In this document: positions 32,363 through 60,879 of the stretch, one piece after another
Numbering within the stretch: position 1 is the stretch's first letter
Layout of the letters: each line of letters opens with the position of its first letter
Sequence record: MW373745.1
DNA: 64,000 bases
Reading direction: 5' to 3' (one strand)
The notes under the pieces: generated by a model
Seen by the model: only the letters and a program-made list of their open reading frames with translations
Told to the model about the DNA's origin: nothing
The model's database searches: none
Made by a program: the position numbers and the translations under genes

Positions 32363-33916
32363 TCAACTAGGCAATTCACTAGCTGCTTGAATTCTAAATA
32401 CAACTTCTTCAATTAAATACTTAGGTTTATAATAAACATCTACATAAATGTTATTATCCTGAGTAGGATTATTAGAAATATCACAAACTATTTTAAAATC
32501 TTCTATATTATTATCTGCAACATAACTTCTACAAATTTCTTTTATTTTTGAAGTTAAATCATTTCTTGTATATTCATCATTATTTTCAAATACATAATAT
32601 AATGCAGCATTTTCACATTCTCGAACTAAATTGAAATATATTATTCTATTTGTTAATTTAGATCCTTTTAAGGTATTTTCACTTAAAGCGTATATACCGG
32701 AATATCCTTTTTTAACAATATTAATATTTAAATCATATAAATCTTTTATTTGTGATTCTGTTAAATATATATCCAAATCTATTGTATTTAAGAAACTATA
32801 AATTGTTTTACAGTGAGATACTGATAATTCTTGTGAATTAATTAATCTGGTTCTTAAACCAACAATATCGCCTATACAATTAACATATATATTTTGATTA
32901 TTAAATGGATTTAATTGTAATTTAGAACCATAGTAAACAACAGCATTGTTTGAAATTTGTAATTGTTTAATATATTCTTCAGGTTTGATACCTCTGGGTA
33001 TGCCTACGAAAGCGCAACAATCACCACGAGTATCTGCTAAATTGATAGCAGAATTTGGACTTTGTGTATTAGCGATTATAAAATCAAACACATAATCATT
33101 AGATTCACCGACACTTTTATATGTTTCATCTATTTGGGCTGCACTTGGTAAACTTGCGTACCCGTTACTTAATTTAAGACTATTAGAACCATAAAAAACT
33201 GTTTTATCTGAGTTAGGTTCATTTCCATCAGCTAAGCGATTTAAGCCATCCACATAGTGGATATTACCATCATATAACTTGTATTTTTTAGGATCGAAAA
33301 CAATGAATATATAATTAGAATTTTCATTAATAGTATCTACCATATCCTCAGCTTCTTTTAAGATATATTTTTCCATTAATGTATCTTTTAAGAACACACA
33401 AATACAATATTGATTTGAACTCATTGAATTTTGAATATCTTTTGCTAAATAATTGCTGTGTATTAGCATATTATTAAGAACTTCATATTGTGTAAAAATA
33501 CAAACTGTTAAATCATTTCCCCACTCTCCTGGGTTTCTAGCAAGGATTCTCAAGAAATTATTTTCAGAAATTATACGTTTACTTCTAAAATCATCTAAGT
33601 TATCTATTCTGACGTCAAAGTCATTAAATGGATAGCTAATACTAGCATTAACTGAATTTTCACCAATAGATCTCGAAATAACTATTTCATTATTATCATA
33701 TAAAAAATAATTATAAATTTGAAACCAGTCATTTATATTATTTTTGTTTGGTTTACCAAATTTTGTTTTAAAATCTAATATAGAATAAACGGATGTTAAA
33801 GTATCTGGTGAACCTTTATCGAAATATCCAGCATAGAATACTCTTCTTGGTTGTGAATAATTTGATGTTGAACTGGTATCACTATCAATAAATCTAACAC
33901 TTGGGACTGGCATCAT
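32363..33916 (-). CDS. Tail sheath-like paralog (gp18 family)
   Basis: ARNPGEWGND, RGDCCAFVG, NINIV and YVDVYYKPKYLIEEV motifs. Confidence 0.75.
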   Translation of the reverse strand: MMPVPSVRFIDSDTSSTSNYSQPRRVFYAGYFDKGSPDTLTSVYSILDFKTKFGKPNKNNINDWFQIYNYFLYDNNEIVISRSIGENSVNASISYPFNDFDVRIDNLDDFRSKRIISENNFLRILARNPGEWGNDLTVCIFTQYEVLNNMLIHSNYLAKDIQNSMSSNQYCICVFLKDTLMEKYILKEAEDMVDTINENSNYIFIVFDPKKYKLYDGNIHYVDGLNRLADGNEPNSDKTVFYGSNSLKLSNGYASLPSAAQIDETYKSVGESNDYVFDFIIANTQSPNSAINLADTRGDCCAFVGIPRGIKPEEYIKQLQISNNAVVYYGSKLQLNPFNNQNIYVNCIGDIVGLRTRLINSQELSVSHCKTIYSFLNTIDLDIYLTESQIKDLYDLNINIVKKGYSGIYALSENTLKGSKLTNRIIYFNLVRECENAALYYVFENNDEYTRNDLTSKIKEICRSYVADNNIEDFKIVCDISNNPTQDNNIYVDVYYKPKYLIEEVVFRIQAASELPS

Positions 33917-33945
33917 AATCCTTCATATAAAAATATATGATTTTT

Positions 33946-52695: not shown

Positions 52696-54030
52696 ATGGA
52701 TAAAAATGTAAGTCTTAATGAAAAAGTAGAGTCTTATATTAAAGATTCAAAATACGCTGCTTTAAATGAAAGTGAAGCTGTATTGATGAGTACATTGCTC
52801 AGCAACACTGCTTTAGCATCTCAAGGTGCACTTGTAGGTGAAAGTGTTATCTCTAGTGATATCGCTCAATTTACACCAATCTTAATGCCAATTGTAAGAA
52901 GGGTTTACCCAGCATTAGTTGCTAATCAACTTTTAGGTATTCAACCTTTAACAATGCCTACAGGTTACATTTATGCATTAGTCAATAGATATACAGGTAA
53001 TAAAAAAGACGGTGCTATATCTCCAGTTTCTAAAGCTCAAATTCTTGTGTTTGAAGCTAATGTGACTAAAGGTGATACTGTTACAGGTACAACTTCAAGT
53101 GCGACAGGTAAAATTATACACGTTGAAAAAGATGGTAAAACTGCTTTAGTTCAGTTAACTAGCGATAAAAAATTCCAAAACGAAGCTGCTAATAAAGGAA
53201 CTAAAATCGTTAACGTTTATTCTAACGAAGCTACTTTCCATAAAATCTTAGAAACTTATTCAGGACCATATAGTACAGCTGACGGTGAAAAACTTGCTGA
53301 AGATATGAACACTGTAGGTTTTGGAATTGAAAAAGATACTGTTGAGGCAAAAACAAGAAAACTTAAAGCTGAATATACTTTAGAAATGTATGAAGATTTA
53401 AAAAATCAACACGGTGTGCTTGCAGATGGACATTTAGCTAATCTTATTGCTGCTGAAATGCAAACTGAAATAGATCGTGAGATTATCAATTTCGTAAACA
53501 ATACAGCTACCGTTGTCGCTGATACTTTAAGTCCAGGTGCTGAACACAAAGAAGCTGGTAGATGGGAAATTGAAAGATATAGATGTAATGCTATCAAAAT
53601 AGATTTAGAAGCAAGAAACATCGGGTTAATGACAAGACGCGGTTCAGGTAATACATTGCTTGTATCTCCAAAAGTTGCTACTATGTTAGATCAAATCGGT
53701 ACATTTAAATTTGCTTCTAGTTCAAGCAATATAGCTACTGATGTATTTACTGGTGATGTAGGGACTTATGATGGTAGATATAATGTAATTGTTGATCAAT
53801 ATGCTAAATCTGATTATATCACTGTTCTTTATAAGGGTACAACCGCTCAAGATAGTCTCGGATTCTTCTGTCCATATGTACCATTAAGCTTCCAAAAAGT
53901 AATGAATCAAGAATCAGGACAACCAGGTATGATTGCAAGAACAAGATATGGCTTAGCTACTAATCCACTTGAACCAGAAAATTACGCAAGAACATTCGGT
54001 GTAGATTTAACAGGAACTATTTTAGCTTAA
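52696..54030 (+). CDS. Major capsid protein (gp23)
   Basis: VRRVYP.L.A...GIQPL..P.G, AKTRKLKAEYT.E..DLK..HG, EIDREI, FFCPYVPL and TRYG motifs. Confidence 0.96.
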   Translation: MDKNVSLNEKVESYIKDSKYAALNESEAVLMSTLLSNTALASQGALVGESVISSDIAQFTPILMPIVRRVYPALVANQLLGIQPLTMPTGYIYALVNRYTGNKKDGAISPVSKAQILVFEANVTKGDTVTGTTSSATGKIIHVEKDGKTALVQLTSDKKFQNEAANKGTKIVNVYSNEATFHKILETYSGPYSTADGEKLAEDMNTVGFGIEKDTVEAKTRKLKAEYTLEMYEDLKNQHGVLADGHLANLIAAEMQTEIDREIINFVNNTATVVADTLSPGAEHKEAGRWEIERYRCNAIKIDLEARNIGLMTRRGSGNTLLVSPKVATMLDQIGTFKFASSSSNIATDVFTGDVGTYDGRYNVIVDQYAKSDYITVLYKGTTAQDSLGFFCPYVPLSFQKVMNQESGQPGMIARTRYGLATNPLEPENYARTFGVDLTGTILA

Positions 54031-54043
54031 TTGCTTCAATAAT

Positions 54044-54070
54044 TTGGGGATGTTAAATCCCCAATCTAAT
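54044..54070 (+). terminator. Rho-independent terminator after gp23
   Basis: TTGGGGAT-GTTAA-ATCCCCAA stem followed by a T-rich tail. Confidence 0.75.
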
Positions 54071-54256
54071 TTTTAATACATAAACTGAAAAAACTCTTAA
54101 AATTCAATTTTTAAATCCTTAAATAAATAATAAGATTCCAATATACTTTAGTCGTTTTAGCCTAAAGGCATCGAAATTGGTTTAAGAGCTCAACAACGAA
54201 GCTTGATGCAGTTCGAGAGACTTTTTGTAATATCAAATCATATTAAAAGGATTAAA

Positions 54257-55639
54257 ATGGCAAATTTACTTAGCCCTGGTATCCAGGTTTCTGAAGTAGA
54301 TCAATCTCAAATTACGCCTGTTGAAGGTGACTCTGCTGCCGTTTTTGGTGGTGATTTTGAGAAAGGACCAGTTGGTGTACATACTTTAATCTCAAGTGTT
54401 CAAGAACTCAGAGATAATTACGGTATGCCTAATACAAAGAATTATAATGATTATTATCAAGTTCAAAATTTCTTAGCTTACAGTGGTGCAATTTATGTTT
54501 CTCGTGCAGCAGACATCAATGGTACACCCACACAATTAGATGGCTTACAATTTGAAGAAAATGCATATAAAACAAATGTTAACGCTAGTAAAATCGAAGG
54601 TGTTAAAGTTATCGAAGCTGACTCTGTAGACGTTAAATTCGAAAAAACTGATAAATTCGAAGTTGGACAAGTTCTTAAATTCAACGATTCTAATAAAGAA
54701 TATAAAATTAAATATGTTAGAAATGAAGTTAAGCAAATACCAAATCCAGATTATCAACCATTAACTCAATTAGTAGTGGACCCAAGTCAAGTAAGTGCTT
54801 ATGTTGATGAAGTTGTTAGCTACGTAATAACAACCGATGCAGAATCTTATACTGTAGAAACAGATAGACCTGATGTGGTTCTTGTTAACAAATCTAATAA
54901 ATCTTTGACTGCATTAAAAGTAGGGACTGCTATTGTAACTTTTAAAGCTACCAAAGAAGGTTCGAGAACTAATTCATTTGAATTAAAATTCGACGTTCAA
55001 GAAAAAGAACAAACAAAATTGATTGTTTCTCCAGAACAATTAAATATAATTCAAGGCGAGCAAGGTGTGTTAAATATCGACACTGATGCTAGTGATTATA
55101 CAATTGTTTCTAAAAACTTAGGTATTGCAAGTATTGAAAGTGATAAGAAAACTGTAAATGGTGTAAGAGTGGGTTCCACTACAATTGAAATCACAGCTCA
55201 AGCTCAAGGAAAAACTGAAGTTACTAAAACTATAACCGTAACCGTTACTGAAGCAGTTGACTTACCAGAAATTACTGGAGTATCTTTTAGCCCAGAATCA
55301 GTTACAGCTAAAATTAATCAAGGTGTTCAAACAGTAACTGCTACATTACCAGAATCTGCTACACTTAAAGCTACTATACAAGATAGTGAAGTTGCAACTT
55401 TGGAAGTTAGTGACAATATTTTAAAAATTACTCCAGTAGCTGCGGGAAACACTACAGTTAATGTAACAGTTTCAAAAGAAGGTCATAAAGATTTTTCAAG
55501 TCAAATATCAGTAACAATTGAAGATTTGCCTGAAATTTCCGACATAATTATCAACAAAGAATCTCTCAGTTTTGATAAAGCCGAAGATGCAGATCCAAGT
55601 GGTAGAGCTAACCAAAAATCTAAAGCTAAGAAAGGATAA
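54257..55639 (+). CDS. Tail sheath N-terminal part fused to three Ig-like domains
   Basis: MANLLSPGIQVSEVD, FEKGPV and FLAYSG.IYVSRA, then three Big_2-like repeats; stops at TAA TAA. Confidence 0.85.
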   Translation: MANLLSPGIQVSEVDQSQITPVEGDSAAVFGGDFEKGPVGVHTLISSVQELRDNYGMPNTKNYNDYYQVQNFLAYSGAIYVSRAADINGTPTQLDGLQFEENAYKTNVNASKIEGVKVIEADSVDVKFEKTDKFEVGQVLKFNDSNKEYKIKYVRNEVKQIPNPDYQPLTQLVVDPSQVSAYVDEVVSYVITTDAESYTVETDRPDVVLVNKSNKSLTALKVGTAIVTFKATKEGSRTNSFELKFDVQEKEQTKLIVSPEQLNIIQGEQGVLNIDTDASDYTIVSKNLGIASIESDKKTVNGVRVGSTTIEITAQAQGKTEVTKTITVTVTEAVDLPEITGVSFSPESVTAKINQGVQTVTATLPESATLKATIQDSEVATLEVSDNILKITPVAAGNTTVNVTVSKEGHKDFSSQISVTIEDLPEISDIIINKESLSFDKAEDADPSGRANQKSKAKKG

Positions 55640-55642
55640 TAA

Positions 55643-56956
55643 ATGGCAGATATCTACGATATACCAGAGTTTATAACTCAAGAAGTAACTATTGTTACTT
55701 TAGACAAAGAACCAGGTGAACTAAATGCAGACACTTCAGTATACTTAATGGAAGGTGAATCTCAACCAGATTCTAATTATATTTTAAGTCTTAGAGGTGC
55801 TAACACTGAATTAAAACGCGGAGATATTATAGCATTTTCTGATGTTTTAACTGATCCAAGATTCAGAATCTTAGCAATCTCTGACAGTATAGTCAATGGT
55901 GAAGCTTTCACAAATATTACTTATGAAGGAACTGAGGATTCTGAAGCTATTGTTGAAGCAACTAAAGGTTTTCCAGTTTATTTAGTTAAGGCTACTAAAT
56001 CGTCTTGTGTTGAAGTTCCTGTAGAAGGTTCTGAAACCAAATACGATGCGTCAGAATATGAACTTTATGATCATACCATTAGTAACTTCAATACATTTGA
56101 TGAAGATAAATTATCTAAACCATTTGTTTATAAAGATGCAAAATTAAAAATATTTGCTAAAACACCGGGAGAGTGGGGCAATAAAATTGATGTCGCAATC
56201 GCACACCCTGATGATTTCAACAAAGGAAAATATATCACTGATGGTATACCATTAGATTCTCAATTTGATTATATTCCTTATGGTGATCAATTTGCTGTTA
56301 TTGTTATCTACGCAAACGAAATTCAAGAATCATTTATTGTAAGCTTAGGCTTAACTGATAAAAATGAGAAAAATGAATTTACTTATATAGAAACAATGAT
56401 TAATGGCAAGTCAAGCTATATCTTAGTTTCTGTAAATGAAGCAGTTCAAGGTAAACCAAAAACTTGTTTAGGTGAAGATTTACTTAAACTTGAAAATGGT
56501 ATGGATTCAGCTCCAGGTATTGGCGATATTATAGACGCTTATACAATTTTTGACAACAAAGAAGAAATCGATGTTGATATCTTAATTTGTAACGAAACTT
56601 ATCCAAAAGCAGCTACTGATATTGCGATTACTCGTGGTGACTGTATAGCATTTATGGGTGCACCAAAAAGTTGTTCAGTGGGTTATAAATCTACAATTGC
56701 TAATCAAAAAACACTTGATTTTAGAAAATCTTTAAATATAGATTCTAAATATGTAACTTTGTGTAGCAATTACAAATATCAATACTGTGCTGAGCTTGGT
56801 GGTTACAGATGGCTGAACTTAGCTGCAGATATTGCAGGTCTTAAAGCTCAAACAAATTATAATCAAGCTAACTGGTATGCAGCTGCTGGTCTTAACAGAG
56901 GTCTCATTAAAAACTGCGAGGCGTTGGCATATAGCCCAACTGGTGCGATGCGTGAT
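55643..56956 (+). CDS. Tail sheath second part, exon 1
   Basis: TPGEWGN, RGDCIAF and WYAAAGLNRG motifs; ends ...AMRD at the 5' splice site. Confidence 0.88.
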
Positions 56957-57073
56957 AGCAACAAAATGCTTTTAATATAATAAAAGTATGTATGTCACCG
57001 GTTACGGAAACGTAACTTGAAAAAAGCCTTTAATTGCTGGAAGGCTAAGTTGTAATATTTCCAAAGGAATAAA

Positions 57074-57946
57074 ATGCAAAAATTAACTTTAAATGAGGAA
57101 AGGTCGGAGCTTCCTCATTTGATCATATTTGTAGAAACACCTAAATTAAAATGTTCTACTAAATTAAATTTAAATTATTCTTATGATATATCTATTAGAT
57201 ATAAATTATTAAAAGAAATTAAAAAATTTAAAGAAAAATATCCAAACTGTGAAAATTTTACTCGTAATAGTAAATTTATCAAAGAATTAAAAGAAGAAAT
57301 ATATAAAAATACTGAATTCTTAGACGATTATAACGCTTGCATATTAGAACGAGTTTATTATATAATAGAAGATTTAAAGCCTATTGATTTAGTTTGTCCT
57401 ACTTGCGGAAATAAGAAAAGATTTAGAAATCTCAGAGAAGGGTTTTCTAATGGATGTTCAAGCAGACACGCGAACTCAACGATGTCCAATGTATTAGCAA
57501 AATCACAGAGTGAAAAAGTTAAAGAAACTTTTAAAAATAAATCACCAGAAGAAAAACAGCAAGCTATAAACAAAGCCAAAGAAACCAAGCGTAAAAAATA
57601 TACACACGAAGATCTAAGCAATATAGCTAAGAAAGCATATCAGGAACATAAAGAAGTCTTTAAATTAGCTATTATTAAAAGAAATGAAACTTATAAGAAT
57701 AATCCAGAAATTATTAAAAATGCCGCTATCAAAGCTGCAAAAACTATGAAAAATAAAAAGATTGAATATAACGGTGAAATTATAGATCATTATCAATTTG
57801 TACATTTAAAAAAATTAGAAAAAGATGAAAATGGTTTAAATTTCTATGATAGGATGCAAATACAAAATCTCGAAAAAGATGAAAATGGTTTAAATTTCTA
57901 TGATAGACACAGAATTAAAAATGCAAGAAAGTGGTGTTTGGCCTAA
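57074..57946 (+). CDS. Intron-encoded homing endonuclease, N-terminal (zinc finger plus repeat) part
   Basis: CPTCG...GCS; basic repeats; 35-bp direct repeat at 57818 and 57872. Confidence 0.65.
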   Translation: MQKLTLNEERSELPHLIIFVETPKLKCSTKLNLNYSYDISIRYKLLKEIKKFKEKYPNCENFTRNSKFIKELKEEIYKNTEFLDDYNACILERVYYIIEDLKPIDLVCPTCGNKKRFRNLREGFSNGCSSRHANSTMSNVLAKSQSEKVKETFKNKSPEEKQQAINKAKETKRKKYTHEDLSNIAKKAYQEHKEVFKLAIIKRNETYKNNPEIIKNAAIKAAKTMKNKKIEYNGEIIDHYQFVHLKKLEKDENGLNFYDRMQIQNLEKDENGLNFYDRHRIKNARKWCLA

Positions 57947-58241
57947 ACCCGAAGATTTACCTGATTTCGAGTACTATAGACGCGTTGTTTGGCGATATAC
58001 TAATAAAAACGATTTAAAAACTTTAGAAAATTATGATAAAAGAGGAACTCTGAAAAACAATGGGTATCATTTAGATCATATATACTCTATAAAAATGGGA
58101 TTTATCAATAATATACCCGCTTATTTAATAGGTAACATATCAAATTTAAGATTTATACCAGCAGTTGAAAATATAAGTAAAAATAGAAGGTGCGATATCG
58201 AAATAGATGATATCTATAATTATATAATACAAAATAAATAA
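57900..58241 (+). CDS. Intron-encoded HNH nuclease domain in the +1 frame
   Basis: YHLDHIYS...NLRFI...ENISK. Confidence 0.75.
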   Translation: MIDTELKMQESGVWPKPEDLPDFEYYRRVVWRYTNKNDLKTLENYDKRGTLKNNGYHLDHIYSIKMGFINNIPAYLIGNISNLRFIPAVENISKNRRCDIEIDDIYNYIIQNK

Positions 58242-58589
58242 ATTGAATTTGTTTAAAAGATTCAATTTTATGTAGAACAAATAAATAAATTGAATCTATT
58301 TAAAAAAGATTCTACTTTGCATTTTGTGATTAAAACTCCGAAACTTTTAATCACTTTACAATATGCTAATCAGCAGCGAAGCTCTTTTTTAAAAGAGAAC
58401 GTTCAACGACTATCGAAAGGGTCTTATAGACACCAAGTAGAGTAGAATTCAAGCGAATTCGAAATGGGGCGCTCTAAGTCATTATGATATGAGCAAGATA
58501 TAGTCTGATCTTTAACGAAAGTTAAAGCAGTTCGTTGTTTACCATTACTTCGAACGGACATCGCGTAGCGAACGATGTTGAACACAATG

Positions 58590-59012
58590 ATACTTTACAA
58601 GAATGGTATAAATCCAGTAGTTATGTTTCCAAACACTGGTGCAGTTCTTTGGGGTCAAAAAACATTACAAACTAAAGCTTCAAGCTTCGATCGTGTAAAC
58701 GTTGTTAGCTTGTTTAACCATTTGGAAAGATCTTTAGGGCGTATGTCGAAGTATAGTCTATTTGAGTTCAATGATAGTTTTACAAGAAATTACCTTGTAA
58801 GTATTATCAAACCTTTCTTGGCGCAAGTAAAAGCTGGCCGCGGGATCCAAGACTACCTTGTGATATGTGACGCATCAAACAATCCAGCAAGTGTAGTTGC
58901 AGCGAACCAACTCGTCATAGACGTATATATTAAGCCGACTTATGTTGCAGAGTTCATTCATCTCAGATTCACGAATGTCGGTTCAAACGACTTCAGCATT
59001 GTTGTAAGCTAA
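58590..59012 (+). CDS. Tail sheath, exon 2 (C-terminal domain)
   Basis: LYKNGINPV, LWGQKT, RVNV..LF and IKPTYVAEFI motifs. Confidence 0.92.
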   Translation: MLYKNGINPVVMFPNTGAVLWGQKTLQTKASSFDRVNVVSLFNHLERSLGRMSKYSLFEFNDSFTRNYLVSIIKPFLAQVKAGRGIQDYLVICDASNNPASVVAANQLVIDVYIKPTYVAEFIHLRFTNVGSNDFSIVVS

Positions 59013-59038
59013 ACCCAAGGTTCAATTTACAAAAGATT

Positions 59039-59058
59039 CAAGGATTTTACGATCCTTG
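59039..59058. terminator. Hairpin between convergent genes
   Basis: CAAGGAT-N6-ATCCTTG. Confidence 0.45.
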
Positions 59059-60879
59059 GATCCACTGAAACTTCATATTTCCACAATCGTATATTATTCT
59101 ATAACCATTTAGCATCATATTAGCACTTTCTGAAAGACTAGGATCGAAAATCTCTAACTTTTCTTTTAGCTTATGTTTTTGAAATTGATGTCTAGCCAGC
59201 AATTTTAAATCTTTGAAATAAAAATAATTAGGCTCAGTATTCTCTACGAACTTAAAACCTAAGGTTTTATATATTGACCCTTTACTAAATCTTCTATTAG
59301 CATAACTTACTATACTTTTTGGTTTATAATTGTCTAAGAAATACTTAAATAATTTAGAAGCTCCTCCTATAACCGAACAATATTTTAAAGTGCATAATCT
59401 TATTAATTCATATTCATAGTTTTTATTAAATCTAGGCTTACCAAATGTCATAACTTCTACTAATTCGTTATTATAAAATAAACCTAAATTAATTTTTGAA
59501 ACTGTCGATTTCTGTAAATGATTCTCATTTAAAAAGTCAACTACTTCATTATAACTTAATTCTTTTATAATACATTTTCTAGCATAAATTTTTTTATTTA
59601 AACCTAGTTTGTTATTAATCATAGAAAACCATATATCTAAATCATCAGATTCAAAAATATGAAATAATTGTATCTCCAAAGCTTCACACATTTCTGTCTT
59701 TTTTAAATGATATTTTTTATCATAATCAGGTGTATTAAACATTCTATGTTTATGTAAACCTCTACTGTGAAAAAATAAACCATCGTATTCAATTGCTAAG
59801 TTATAATCAGGCAAAAATATATCTAATTCACCCTTTATAATATTTTTAACATTGTATTTTTTTATATCAGTTTTAATAAAATCAAATATTTTTTGTTGTG
59901 TTTTAGCTATACTAGTAACATTAGGTTCTTCTACGTTAAATTTTTTCTTATATTTTAGAACACCTGTCGGGCTTAAGTTATAAAAATTTGAACAGGCGTC
60001 TGCATCAAATCTTTCATTTTTTATGAAAGTCTTAAAATAATCCTCGTGCAGTAAATCATTATTTTTTAAATGTCTTTGAGTTGGGCTAGCGACTCCATAA
60101 AGTTCCAAATTTGTTTGTTTTCGCTTTTCGTTTATTTCTATGATTTCTTCCTCAGATTTTGAATTCCAAGATTCTATAATTAAATCTTTATTACCACACT
60201 CATAACCATAACGTTCCAAATTAGTTTGTTTTCTTTGATCAGCGATTCTTTGTATTTCTTCATCGGATTTAGAATCCCAGGTTTTACGAACGGATTCTTT
60301 AAATTCCTTTGTTTGAGAATTACAGATAACTCCAAACTTTTTTAGATTTGTTTCAATTGTTTTATTTTTAACAACTTCACTTTGTGTCGCATATTCAGTA
60401 TTATATTTACTTAAATTGGTTTCTTTTCTTTTATTGTTTATTTCGGTATAATCTGTATTGGCTTTGGTGTTTCTAATTTTATCATTTACTTCTGGTATCT
60501 GTGATACGTTTTCTACATTGTATTTTTCTTTTATTGTTTCTTTATGTTTATCTATATTATTGTAGTTAGCATCACCATATCTTTCTAATTTTGTAGATTT
60601 GATTTTAGCTATGCGTATTTTGTTAAAATCTGGTGATTTTAGACATTCTTTACAATATTGTGTCCTTGTCTTAGTTCCACAAATTACACAAAAATTAGGA
60701 TTGTTTTGTAAATCCTTGTAGTCTTTGTATATTGAATGAAATTCCCCATTATATTTAGGGTCTTTTAATAGAATATCAATAATTTGTTTTCTATAAAGTG
60801 GATACTGTTTTAATTCAATGAGTATTTCTTTGAAAGTTTTGTTTAGATCTATCGTTATATTTTTATAAGTTACTTTCAT
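59047..60879 (-). CDS. Free-standing Hef-like homing endonuclease (Vsr/PD-(D/E)xK type)
   Basis: KxTNLxxYG repeats; ELDIFLPDYNLAIEYDGLFFH; GGASKLFKYF...SYANRR...YDCG. Confidence 0.8.
   Translation of the reverse strand: MKVTYKNITIDLNKTFKEILIELKQYPLYRKQIIDILLKDPKYNGEFHSIYKDYKDLQNNPNFCVICGTKTRTQYCKECLKSPDFNKIRIAKIKSTKLERYGDANYNNIDKHKETIKEKYNVENVSQIPEVNDKIRNTKANTDYTEINNKRKETNLSKYNTEYATQSEVVKNKTIETNLKKFGVICNSQTKEFKESVRKTWDSKSDEEIQRIADQRKQTNLERYGYECGNKDLIIESWNSKSEEEIIEINEKRKQTNLELYGVASPTQRHLKNNDLLHEDYFKTFIKNERFDADACSNFYNLSPTGVLKYKKKFNVEEPNVTSIAKTQQKIFDFIKTDIKKYNVKNIIKGELDIFLPDYNLAIEYDGLFFHSRGLHKHRMFNTPDYDKKYHLKKTEMCEALEIQLFHIFESDDLDIWFSMINNKLGLNKKIYARKCIIKELSYNEVVDFLNENHLQKSTVSKINLGLFYNNELVEVMTFGKPRFNKNYEYELIRLCTLKYCSVIGGASKLFKYFLDNYKPKSIVSYANRRFSKGSIYKTLGFKFVENTEPNYFYFKDLKLLARHQFQKHKLKEKLEIFDPSLSESANMMLNGYRIIYDCGNMKFQWIQGS

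What the first reader, a model, noticed from the sequence alone, without database searches (positions are those of the whole stretch)
54257..56956. Tail sheath split into two polypeptides at an Ig-domain insertion
Seen: the gp18 N-terminus runs into three Big_2-like domains and ends TAA TAA ATG (55637-55645). The second ORF is in the same frame with its own AAGGA RBS and resumes sheath sequence (EVTIVTLDKEPG...TPGEWGN). Inference: Ig domains were inserted into an outer sheath loop and the chain was then broken, so the sheath would assemble from two complementing pieces displaying Ig arrays (possible mucus or glycan adhesion). The double stop plus RBS argues against a sequencing error.
Basis: partly seen in the sequence, partly recalled or inferred. 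Interest (0 to 1): 0.68.

Follow-up and report, generated by a model that had tools for sequence, protein, structure and literature searches.

The report
Phage tail sheath made of two chains
In this Campylobacter phage and a whole clade of relatives, the contractile tail-sheath subunit is encoded as two separately translated proteins that complete each other. The first ends in a free, length-variable string of Ig-like domains, so the layout resembles the two-chain sheath of bacterial type VI secretion systems.

Summary
The window is Campylobacter phage CJLB-13, a CP220-type Firehammervirus.

**The two ORFs.** ORF 54257-55639 (460 aa) ends TAA TAA and is followed at once by ATG at 55643. It is in the same frame, with an AAAGGA ribosome-binding site 6 nt upstream.

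**The pieces tile one T4 gp18:**
- N-part residues 3-90 match gp18 2-89.
- C-part exon 1 residues 170-438 match gp18 222-515.
- Exon 2 matches gp18 517-646.

**Unsplit relatives.** Relatives of 722-775 aa carry both halves in one chain. Only 16 residues, at the end of a predicted long beta-hairpin of the outer module, lie where the window has three Ig domains, a disordered tail, the stops and a new start.

**Conservation.** The stop, ribosome-binding site and start are present in all 10 related phage records examined. They are also present in diverged metagenomic lineages, with gaps of 1-15 nt in all three relative frames. On a tree the split forms are one clade (SH-aLRT 99) nested among unsplit forms.

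**Virion evidence.** Published proteomics (CP220, IBB_35) found both products as separate proteins of the predicted sizes. The authors read them as "types of Gp18".

**Untested or not obtained.** The adhesion role of the Ig array is untested. The complex prediction could not be run. The second ORF is also interrupted by an intron-like element (56957-58589).

The parts
54257..55639 (+). N-part gene (460 aa plus first TAA): sheath N-terminal anchor, first half of the outer module, three Ig-like domains, disordered basic tail
   Evidence: ORF. Matches T4 gp18 2-89. 55% identical to residues 1-96 of the Vibrio phage pv27 sheath. AF2 model.
54257..54544 (+). Residues 1-96: N-terminal arm and first core segment of the sheath fold
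   Evidence: phmmer against T4 gp18 and KP1 sheath. blastp against single-chain sheaths of pv27 and CP30A. Invariant S6, G8, G32, F34, G37, P38 and others.
54545..54727 (+). Residues 97-157: first half of the outer module, ending in the first strand of the long hairpin
   Evidence: Aligns to residues 1-155 of the unsplit relative P0206 together with the anchor (43% identity). Poorly predicted when folded alone (pLDDT 31-60), but confidently folded in the unsplit relative.
54767..55522 (+). Three tandem Ig-like (Big_2-type) domains: residues 171-250, 253-332 and 341-422
   Evidence: AF2 pLDDT about 85-93. Pfam Big_2 at residues 339-409, 33.3 bits against a cut-off of 22.8. Foldseek matches tandem Ig arrays.
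55532..55636 (+). Residues 426-460: stub of a fourth Ig domain plus a disordered basic tail. Deletion scar relative to the 5-Ig form (P0001, CP21).
   Evidence: pLDDT below 50. P0001 (621 aa, 99% identical) and CP21 carry about 161 aa more at this point.
55631..55636 (+). Shine-Dalgarno AAAGGA for the C-part. It lies inside the last codons of the N-part, 6 nt before the ATG.
   Evidence: Conserved in all 10 related records. Similar GGA/GAGG motifs occur in diverged loci.
55637..55642 (+). TAA TAA double stop ending the N-part
   Evidence: Relatives have TAA CAA, CAA TAA, or a stop in another frame 13-57 nt upstream, but always at least one stop.
55643..56956 (+). C-part exon 1 (438 codons): second hairpin strand, second half of the outer module, sheath core domains
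   Evidence: Residues 13-438 match residues 172-594 of unsplit P0206 (51% identity). Residues 170-438 match T4 gp18 222-515. Exon end derived.
56957..58589 (+). Intron-like insertion with endonuclease-type ORFs (57074-57946 and 57900-58241). Absent from CP220, CPt10, IBB_35, WX1, CJLB-12 and CJLB-14.
   Evidence: Exon 1 ends in U and the insert ends in G. No Rfam match.
58590..59012 (+). C-part exon 2 (140 codons plus stop): sheath C-terminal domain
   Evidence: Pfam Phage_sheath_1C, 44.1 bits against a cut-off of 26.9. Matches T4 gp18 517-646, E 1e-26. Matches CP220 C-part 440-578.

Best explanation
The main tail-sheath protomer of this phage is a heterodimer of two separately translated polypeptides.

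**N-part (460 aa).** It supplies the N-terminal arm and first core segment of the gp18 fold, then the first half of an outer module. It leaves the sheath body along one strand of a long two-stranded ribbon and continues as three Ig-like domains with a free, disordered C-terminus.

**C-part (578 aa after removal of the intron-like insert).** It starts with the partner strand of that ribbon and supplies the rest of the outer module and all remaining core domains.

**Translation.** The C-part has its own ribosome-binding site, which lies inside the last codons of the N-part, 3 nt after the first stop. The two halves are therefore probably made in coupled, near-equal amounts (inferred).

**Consequence of the break.** The Ig string does not have to return to the sheath body. 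It can grow, shrink or change its tail without disturbing the contractile core (inferred). This fits the 256-742 aa range of N-parts seen.

**Likely role of the Ig strings.** They most likely act as accessory adhesion whiskers on every sheath subunit. Possible targets are host surface or flagellar glycans, or gut mucus. This is inferred and untested.

**Shown here:** the split, the complementarity, the site of the break, its single ancient origin, and its conservation.

**Shown by others:** both products are separate virion proteins.
For: **1. Non-overlapping tiling of one sheath.**
- N-part 3-90 = T4 gp18 2-89.
- Exon 1 residues 170-438 = gp18 222-515.
- Exon 2 = gp18 517-646.
- Vibrio phage pv27 sheath residues 1-96, 194-507 and 508-646 match the three pieces at 55%, 41% and 70% identity.

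**2. Unsplit relatives of 722-775 aa hold both halves.**
- Window N-part 1-157 = P0206 1-155, and C-part 13-438 = P0206 172-594.
- The AF2 model of P0206 (pLDDT 88, pTM 0.80) has consecutive long strands at 147-163 and 166-179, so the break maps to the far end of that hairpin.
- The model is a gp18-type sheath: VIA-align Z 33.8 against KP1 sheath and 31.5 against T4 gp18.

**3. Junction conserved.** It is present in 10 phage records. In lineages down to 44-61% identity the gaps are 1, 13, 14 and 15 nt, in all three relative frames.

**4. Single origin.** The 26 split C-parts form one clade (SH-aLRT 99) inside a grade of unsplit forms. One change of state is enough.

**5. Virion proteomics of orthologues.**
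- CP220 shows separate SDS-PAGE bands for CPT_0052 (58.4 kDa) and CPT_0053 (64.2 kDa), matching the predicted masses (PMC2853527).
- In IBB_35, gene 1-7 had 30.9% and gene 1-8 had 11.8% peptide coverage (PMC3322345 Table S2).

**6. Variable Ig array.** It has a different C-terminal tail in different lineages. It varies by clean deletions between 99%-identical phages.
Against:
- The position of the hairpin relative to the tail surface rests on a predicted model of a relative and on sequence register, not on coordinates I could inspect.
- A third, complete sheath-like protein (window 32372-33922, minus strand) is also in virions. Which protein forms the bulk of the sheath is therefore inferred from peptide coverage only.
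- Splicing of the insert at 56957-58589 is assumed, not shown, and Rfam finds no group I intron there.
- Nothing tested here bears on what the Ig domains bind.
Confidence: 0.8

Rival explanations
1. The N-part is not part of the contractile lattice. The C-part, or the third sheath paralogue, forms the sheath, and the N-part is a decoration or fibre protein that merely kept a sheath-derived N-terminus.
For: - A complete compact sheath paralogue exists at window 32372-33922 and is found in virions.
- Deletion of two Ig domains and the tail is tolerated in CJLB-12 and CJLB-14.
Against: - The C-part lacks the N-terminal arm and first core segment that every single-chain sheath has. Those residues are provided only by the N-part.
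- The N-part anchor is as conserved as the C-part: 55% identical to pv27 over residues 1-96, with invariant residues.
- The tolerated deletions never touch residues 1-250.
- The two genes stay adjacent and coupled across the whole clade.
- The paralogue has the lowest peptide coverage, 3.5%.
Confidence: 0.1
2. The two ORFs are two alternative 'types of Gp18', each able to build a sheath. This is the reading in the CP220 paper.
For: Both are annotated as tail sheath and both are found in virions.
Against: They do not overlap in what they match. One covers gp18 2-89 only and the other covers 222-646 only. Neither is a whole sheath protein. Unsplit relatives join them in one chain.
Confidence: 0.03
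3. A fused full-length protein is made by stop-codon read-through, frameshift or hopping. The split is only apparent.
For: In the window and in CP220 the two ORFs are in the same frame, 3 nt apart.
Against: - The window has a double stop.
- In relatives the N-part ends in other frames, 13, 14 or 57 nt upstream.
- The C-part has its own ribosome-binding site and ATG in every lineage.
- The SDS-PAGE bands match the separate masses.
Confidence: 0.03
4. The stop is a sequencing or assembly error in this record.
For: None found. The CJLB-13 record is unannotated and unusually long.
Against: The same junction appears in 10 independent GenBank records and in many metagenome contigs.
Confidence: 0.01

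Closest known systems
T4 gp18 and other single-chain contractile tail sheath proteins (for example Klebsiella phage KP1, Vibrio phage pv27, Fletchervirus CP30A)
   Same: The same core fold segments in the same order. There is significant sequence similarity over all core parts. The outer, variable module sits at the place of gp18 domain I, between gp18 residues about 90 and 221. The gp18 domain limits are from my own knowledge of Aksyuk et al. 2009.
   Different: Here the chain is cut in the outer module and made as two proteins. The first carries a free-ended Ig array. CP30A, from the sister genus, has a single 636-aa ORF.
Type VI secretion sheath TssB/TssC (VipA/VipB)
   Same: The sheath protomer is built from two polypeptides. 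The small first chain gives the N-terminal part of the core fold and the large second chain gives the rest, with the chain ends in the outermost added domain. This comes from established knowledge of the VipA/VipB structures. [quoted passage not shown]
   Different: There is no sequence membership: no VipA or VipB Pfam hit. This is a virion tail that fires once, so there is no recycling domain or ClpV logic. The outer part is an Ig array. The origin is independent, from a T4-type single chain.
Ig-like decoration domains on phage virions (T4 Hoc, Ig insertions in sheath and tube proteins; Fraser et al. 2006; 'type 3' multi-domain sheaths of Evseev et al. 2022)
   Same: Surface-exposed Ig-like domains added to a structural protein, proposed to give weak carbohydrate adhesion (PMC9230969).
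   Different: In those cases the domains are part of one chain or of a separate decoration protein. Here they hang from one half of a split structural subunit and end free.
Unsplit two-module sheaths from metagenomes (P0206, P0210-P0217, P0219; 722-775 aa)
   Same: The nearest relatives outside the split clade. They have the same anchor, the same outer module and 48-57% identity to the C-part.
   Different: They are one chain, with a 16-residue hairpin end (or a 45-residue acidic linker in P0216) where the split forms have the Ig array, stop and restart.

Membership tests
T4-type contractile tail sheath (gp18; Pfam Phage_sheath_1, Phage_sheath_domII, Phage_sheath_1C) | N-terminal arm and first core segment (gp18 residues 2-89) | tested here: met
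   Present on the N-part only. phmmer E 6e-5 to 4e-4 against solved gp18-type chains. 55% identity to pv27 residues 1-96.
T4-type contractile tail sheath (gp18; Pfam Phage_sheath_1, Phage_sheath_domII, Phage_sheath_1C) | Core domains (gp18 222-515) | tested here: met
   C-part exon 1 residues 170-438, E 9e-26 to 7e-21. Pfam Phage_sheath_1 scores 28.8 bits, just under the 31.4 cut-off, for the exon alone. Uninterrupted orthologues carry PF04984 and PF17482.
T4-type contractile tail sheath (gp18; Pfam Phage_sheath_1, Phage_sheath_domII, Phage_sheath_1C) | C-terminal domain (gp18 517-646) | tested here: met
   Exon 2: PF17482 at 44.1 bits against a cut-off of 26.9. E 1e-26 against T4 gp18.
T4-type contractile tail sheath (gp18; Pfam Phage_sheath_1, Phage_sheath_domII, Phage_sheath_1C) | One polypeptide per protomer | tested here: not met
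   Two ORFs separated by stops and a restart, conserved across the clade.
T4-type contractile tail sheath (gp18; Pfam Phage_sheath_1, Phage_sheath_domII, Phage_sheath_1C) | Present in the virion tail | not testable with these tools
   Published for the orthologues: CP220 gel bands (PMC2853527) and IBB_35 MS coverage of 30.9% and 11.8% (PMC3322345).
T6SS sheath TssB/TssC | Protomer encoded as two adjacent genes, small N-terminal chain first, with the break in the outer domain | tested here: met
   Gene order and site of the break. That the two chains assemble is inferred.
T6SS sheath TssB/TssC | Sequence membership in the VipA/VipB families | tested here: not met
   The Pfam scan at E <= 0.01 lists only Big_2, PEGA and phage sheath families. 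The tree places the split forms inside T4-type phage sheaths.
T6SS sheath TssB/TssC | Recycling by ClpV through an exposed helical domain | not tested
   No helical outer domain is predicted. The outer parts are all-beta.
Bacterial Ig-like domain group 2 (Big_2) | Pfam PF02368 above the gathering score | tested here: met
   Residues 339-409, 33.3 bits against 22.8. The other two domains are recognised by fold only.
Bacterial Ig-like domain group 2 (Big_2) | Tandem beta-sandwich fold | tested here: met
   Three beta-sandwiches at pLDDT about 90. Foldseek best matches are tandem Ig arrays of S-layer proteins, cadherins and phage proteins.
Group I intron (for the insert at 56957-58589) | Exon 1 ends in U, the insert ends in G, and intron-less alleles exist at the same site | tested here: met
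   CP220, CJLB-12 and CJLB-14 lack the insert. CC_R7 has a shorter one.
Group I intron (for the insert at 56957-58589) | Match to the Rfam group I covariance model | tested here: not met
   No such match at E <= 1 over 54000-59200.

The most novel reading that the evidence does not exclude
This would be the first phage tail whose contractile sheath protomer is an obligate heterodimer, arising independently of the T6SS TssB/TssC split. Cutting the chain at the end of an outer hairpin turned a constrained loop insertion into a free-ended, recombination-tunable Ig whisker on every sheath subunit. These motility-dependent (flagellotropic) Campylobacter phages would then use the whiskers to hold on to glycosylated flagella or to gut mucus.
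Probability: 0.3. Interest if true: 0.78.

Novelty: new variant of a known kind. Interest (0 to 1): 0.62.

Why it matters
**A rule is broken.** Sheath proteins of phages, tailocins and extracellular injection systems are treated as single chains. The only textbook two-chain sheath is that of type VI secretion. A stable, ancient split in a T4-type phage sheath shows that the contractile fold tolerates a break at the same topological place in an independent lineage. Unsplit and split relatives sit side by side, which gives a natural fragment-complementation pair to study.

**Annotation and literature.** Genomes of Campylobacter phages are candidates for poultry biocontrol. They list two or three "tail sheath proteins", and the CP220 paper read them as alternative sheath types.

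**Host interaction.** If the free Ig strings mediate adhesion, their rapid length changes between near-identical isolates would be a new variable to watch in host-range and gut-persistence studies.

Tried and rejected

There is therefore no verdict on binding.
- Read laying on four runs laid no contig over 54257-56640. It is uninformative for the junction. No RNA run held the stretch, so splicing and co-transcription are untested.
- The genome search 'own': the assembly is not held. I used the CP21 record G001 instead.
- The IMG/VR scan found only CP220, CPt10, CP21 and one distant contig.

**Searches with negative or unspecific results**
- Rfam over 54000-59200 gave no credible hit and no group I intron.
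- tblastn of the two module halves flanking the break against 50,697 phage records hit only the 11 Firehammervirus-type phages. The wider clade appeared only in the metagenome protein search.
- P0019 (449 aa) looked like a distant N-part. It is instead a sheath cut by an intron at another place, after the KYQYD motif. I rejected it as a second example of this split.
- Foldseek on the N-part model gave generic tandem-Ig matches with no hint of a ligand.
- Paper searches for an explicit description of a split phage sheath found none in the held library. Subscription papers on these phages could not be searched.
- No intein or Hint family was found on either chain, so protein splicing is rejected.

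**Handling of the interrupted gene.** Searches were run exon by exon, by reference. For the whole C-part I used the naturally uninterrupted CP220 orthologue (P0121).
Full report
**What the window is.** The stretch 54200-59100 is 100% identical to Campylobacter phage CJLB-13 and 99.9% identical to phage F379. It is 92-99% identical to CP21, CP220, CPt10, IBB_35, WX1, CP20 and CC_R7. All are CP220-type Campylobacter myoviruses of the genus Firehammervirus. The gene upstream is the gp23 major capsid protein (Pfam Gp23, E 1.7e-104).

**The observation.** ORF 54257-55639 encodes 460 aa. The longer TTG-started frame from 54203 is unlikely, because MANLLSPG aligns with the first residues of T4 gp18. 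The sequence at 55631-55645 reads AAAGGA TAA TAA ATG, and the next ORF starts at 55643 in the same frame.

**What the two ORFs are.** I compared each piece with solved structures.
- N-part residues 3-90 match T4 gp18 residues 2-89, and match the Klebsiella phage KP1 sheath up to residue 114.
- The second ORF matches gp18 222-515 with its residues 170-438.
- A third ORF, 58575-59012, matches gp18 517-646 with its residues 7-136.
- The single-chain sheath of Vibrio phage pv27 (648 aa) is tiled by the three pieces: 1-96 at 55% identity, 194-507 at 41% and 508-646 at 70%.
- The 636-aa sheath of Fletchervirus CP30A, from the sister genus, is tiled in the same way.

The pieces do not overlap, and together they make exactly one sheath protein. 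Only the region at the position of gp18 domain I differs. That is the outermost domain, and its limits come from my own knowledge of the gp18 crystal structure paper. This region is replaced by N-part residues 91-460 plus C-part residues 1-169.

**The N-part model.** The AF2 model of the N-part shows the following.
- Three confident Ig-like beta-sandwiches at 171-250, 253-332 and 341-422.
- A disordered tail at 426-460.
- A poorly predicted stretch at 87-170.

Pfam Big_2 passes its cut-off for the third domain only. Foldseek matches tandem Ig arrays in general.

**The second interruption.** The 445-aa ORF does not end where the sheath sequence does. Comparison with the uninterrupted CP220 gene places exon 1 at 55643-56956, an insert at 56957-58589, and exon 2 at 58590-59012. 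Exon 1 ends in U and the insert ends in G. The joined reading frame would give 578 codons, as in CP220.
- The insert carries two overlapping ORFs.
- It is absent from CP220, CPt10, IBB_35, WX1, CJLB-12 and CJLB-14, and it is shorter in CC_R7.
- Rfam finds no group I intron there.

This element is the subject of a separate note of the scan (s1-412016). I reached the same limits independently. I did not build the joined sequence. Searches were run exon by exon, and for the whole C-part I used the naturally uninterrupted CP220 protein (P0121).

**Is the split real and conserved?** All 10 related phage records examined have a stop, the ribosome-binding site and the ATG at this junction.
- CP220, CPt10 and IBB_35 read GGA TAA CAA ATG.
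- CP21 reads GGA CAA TAA ATG.
- In CC_R7 the N-part ends in another frame, 13 nt upstream.
- In CJLB-12 and CJLB-14 it ends earlier still.

In metagenome contigs carrying more distant relatives, the N-part gene is still followed by the C-part gene. In those contigs the N-part anchor is 44-75% identical and the C-part 61-80% identical. The gaps are 15, 14, 13, 13 and 1 nt, and all three relative frames occur. That excludes read-through or a fixed frameshift as the way a single protein could be made. It also excludes a sequencing error.

All split C-parts begin near a shared short motif of the type Y-D-(I/V)-P-E-F. All N-parts carry a short N-P-(D/E)-(Y/F)-x-P motif just before the Ig array. Conserved residues therefore flank the break on both chains.

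**Where exactly is the break?** The protein search with the CP220 C-part found two kinds of relatives.
- About 80 C-part-type proteins of 577-621 aa.
- A set of 722-775-aa proteins that cover 92-98% of the C-part and also start with the sheath N-terminus.

In one of the longer proteins (P0206, 738 aa), residues 1-155 align with window N-part 1-157 at 43% identity. Residues 172-594 align with window C-part 13-438 at 51% identity. Only 16 residues of P0206 lie where the window has 303 residues of linker, Ig domains and tail, two stops, and the first 12 residues of the C-part.

The AF2 model of P0206 is confident (pLDDT 88, pTM 0.80). It has two long consecutive strands, 147-163 and 166-179, which form a long beta-hairpin. 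The model as a whole is a gp18-type sheath: Z 33.8 with rmsd 2.9 over 479 residues against KP1, and Z 31.5 against T4 gp18.

The break and the Ig array therefore sit at the far end of that hairpin in the outer module. In the split forms the two strands would belong to different chains. The N-part stretch 87-170 is badly predicted alone but well predicted in the unsplit chain. This weakly suggests that it needs the partner to fold. The alignments used differ in depth, so I give this little weight.

**History.** I built a maximum-likelihood tree on the 535 columns shared by all forms; the N-terminal columns dropped out by themselves.
- The 26 split representatives form one clade (SH-aLRT 99).
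- That clade is nested in a grade of unsplit two-module forms.
- These in turn are sister to ordinary 630-650-aa sheaths.

One change of state suffices. Branch lengths inside the split clade are large, so the split is old and has been kept.

I saw no split form without an Ig array. I also saw no unsplit form with one among candidates up to 1011 aa, so longer fusions were not examined. The order of insertion and breakage is therefore open. P0216 has a 45-residue acidic linker at the site, which shows that the spot accepts insertions.

**Published experimental evidence.**
- For CP220, tryptic-peptide sequencing of SDS-PAGE bands of virions identified CPT_0053 (64.2 kDa), CPT_0034 (59.2 kDa) and CPT_0052 (58.4 kDa). 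The legend states that the masses correspond to the translation products (PMC2853527). CPT_0052 and CPT_0053 are the N-part and C-part orthologues.
[quoted passage not shown] They wondered whether these are mixed within a virion.
- For IBB_35, virion MS gave 30.9% coverage for gene 1-7 (the N-part), 11.8% for gene 1-8 (the C-part) and 3.5% for gene 2-15 (the paralogue) (PMC3322345).

I found no paper in the held library that describes the two proteins as halves of one protomer. Subscription papers could not be searched.

**The Ig array is variable and partly dispensable.**
- N-part homologues range from 256 to 742 aa. They end in unrelated tails: basic, acidic, or Ser/Thr/Glu-rich.
- The window's N-part equals the 621-aa form P0001 (99% identity) minus 161 residues. 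CP21 has the extra 485 nt at window position 55580.
- CJLB-12 and CJLB-14 are 99.3-99.9% identical in the flanks but lack window 55022-55579, and they keep only one Ig domain.
- There are no long DNA repeats in the region that could cause assembly collapse.
- No deletion touches residues 1-250.
- In more distant lineages further Ig-like ORFs lie between the two sheath genes.

**Mechanism proposed.** Each protomer is a heterodimer.
- The N-part gives the N-terminal arm and first core segment. In other sheaths these are part of the inter-subunit mesh (established knowledge). It also gives half of the outer module.
- The C-part gives the rest.
- The ribosome-binding site lies inside the end of the first gene and the gap is only 3 nt. 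This suggests translational coupling and near-equal amounts (inferred).
- The break frees the Ig string from having to return to the body. That would explain why it can vary so widely (inferred).
- An adhesion role is plausible. Ig-like domains on virions are generally thought to bind carbohydrates weakly (PMC9230969). CP220-type phages also need host motility and are regarded as flagellotropic (PMC4293142). Nothing here tests this role.

**Comparison with what is known.** The protein is a T4-type sheath by every sequence and fold criterion except being one chain. It works like the T6SS TssB/TssC pair in being a two-chain protomer with the break in the outer domain. It is not a member of those families (no Pfam hit) and it arose inside phage sheaths.

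**Verdict.** I class it as a new variant of a known kind. The genes and their virion products are on record, but the reading as an obligate two-chain sheath, its exact break site, its single origin and its wide clade appear to be new.

**Limits.**
- No binding test could be run.
- No reads covered the junction.
- Splicing is not shown.
- The Ig function is not tested.

Noticed in passing
window 32372-33922 (-): A third, complete and compact sheath-like protein of about 517 aa. It has its own N-terminus and C-terminal domain and is 27% identical to the C-part. It is the orthologue of CPT_0034 and IBB_35 gene 2-15. It is found in virions at low coverage (3.5%). Its role is unknown; one possibility is a baseplate- or neck-proximal sheath ring, as in Afp/PVC systems.
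   Followed up: partly
window 56957-58589: Intron-like insert in the sheath C-part. Exon 1 ends in U and the insert ends in G. The insert is absent from six relatives and shorter in CC_R7. No Rfam group I match was found. It was already noted by the scan as s1-412016.
   Followed up: partly
window 57900-57946, around 57917: The endonuclease reading frame inside the insert is split into two overlapping ORFs (57074-57946 and 57900-58241). Contigs of two public runs lack one base at 57917, and CP21 is annotated with one 388-aa ORF there. The frameshift in this record may therefore be an error or a recent mutation.
   Followed up: partly
window 59047-60879 (-): A 610-aa Hef-like homing endonuclease gene lies directly downstream of the sheath gene on the other strand. 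It is annotated as such in F379, CP220 and IBB_35.
   Followed up: no
window 55022-55580; L010, L011, L006: Ig-array indels between near-identical phages. CJLB-12 and CJLB-14 lack 558 nt here and shift frame before the C-part. CP21 has 485 nt more at 55580. Position 55579/55580 is a recurrent end point.
   Followed up: yes
L025:2123-4487, L026:2237-4499, L027:1-3010: In distant split lineages the space between the two sheath genes holds extra Ig-like ORFs: 495 aa, 100 + 113 aa, and 329 + 258 + 195 aa. In L025 the anchor ORF (295 aa) and the Ig ORF overlap by 11 nt. This may be a further split or a frameshift.
   Followed up: partly
L014:5001-6350 (P0019): Another T4-like phage from a metagenome has its sheath gene cut after the KYQYD motif, with about 2 kb of small ORFs before the likely continuation. 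This is a different interruption site from either of those in the window.
   Followed up: no
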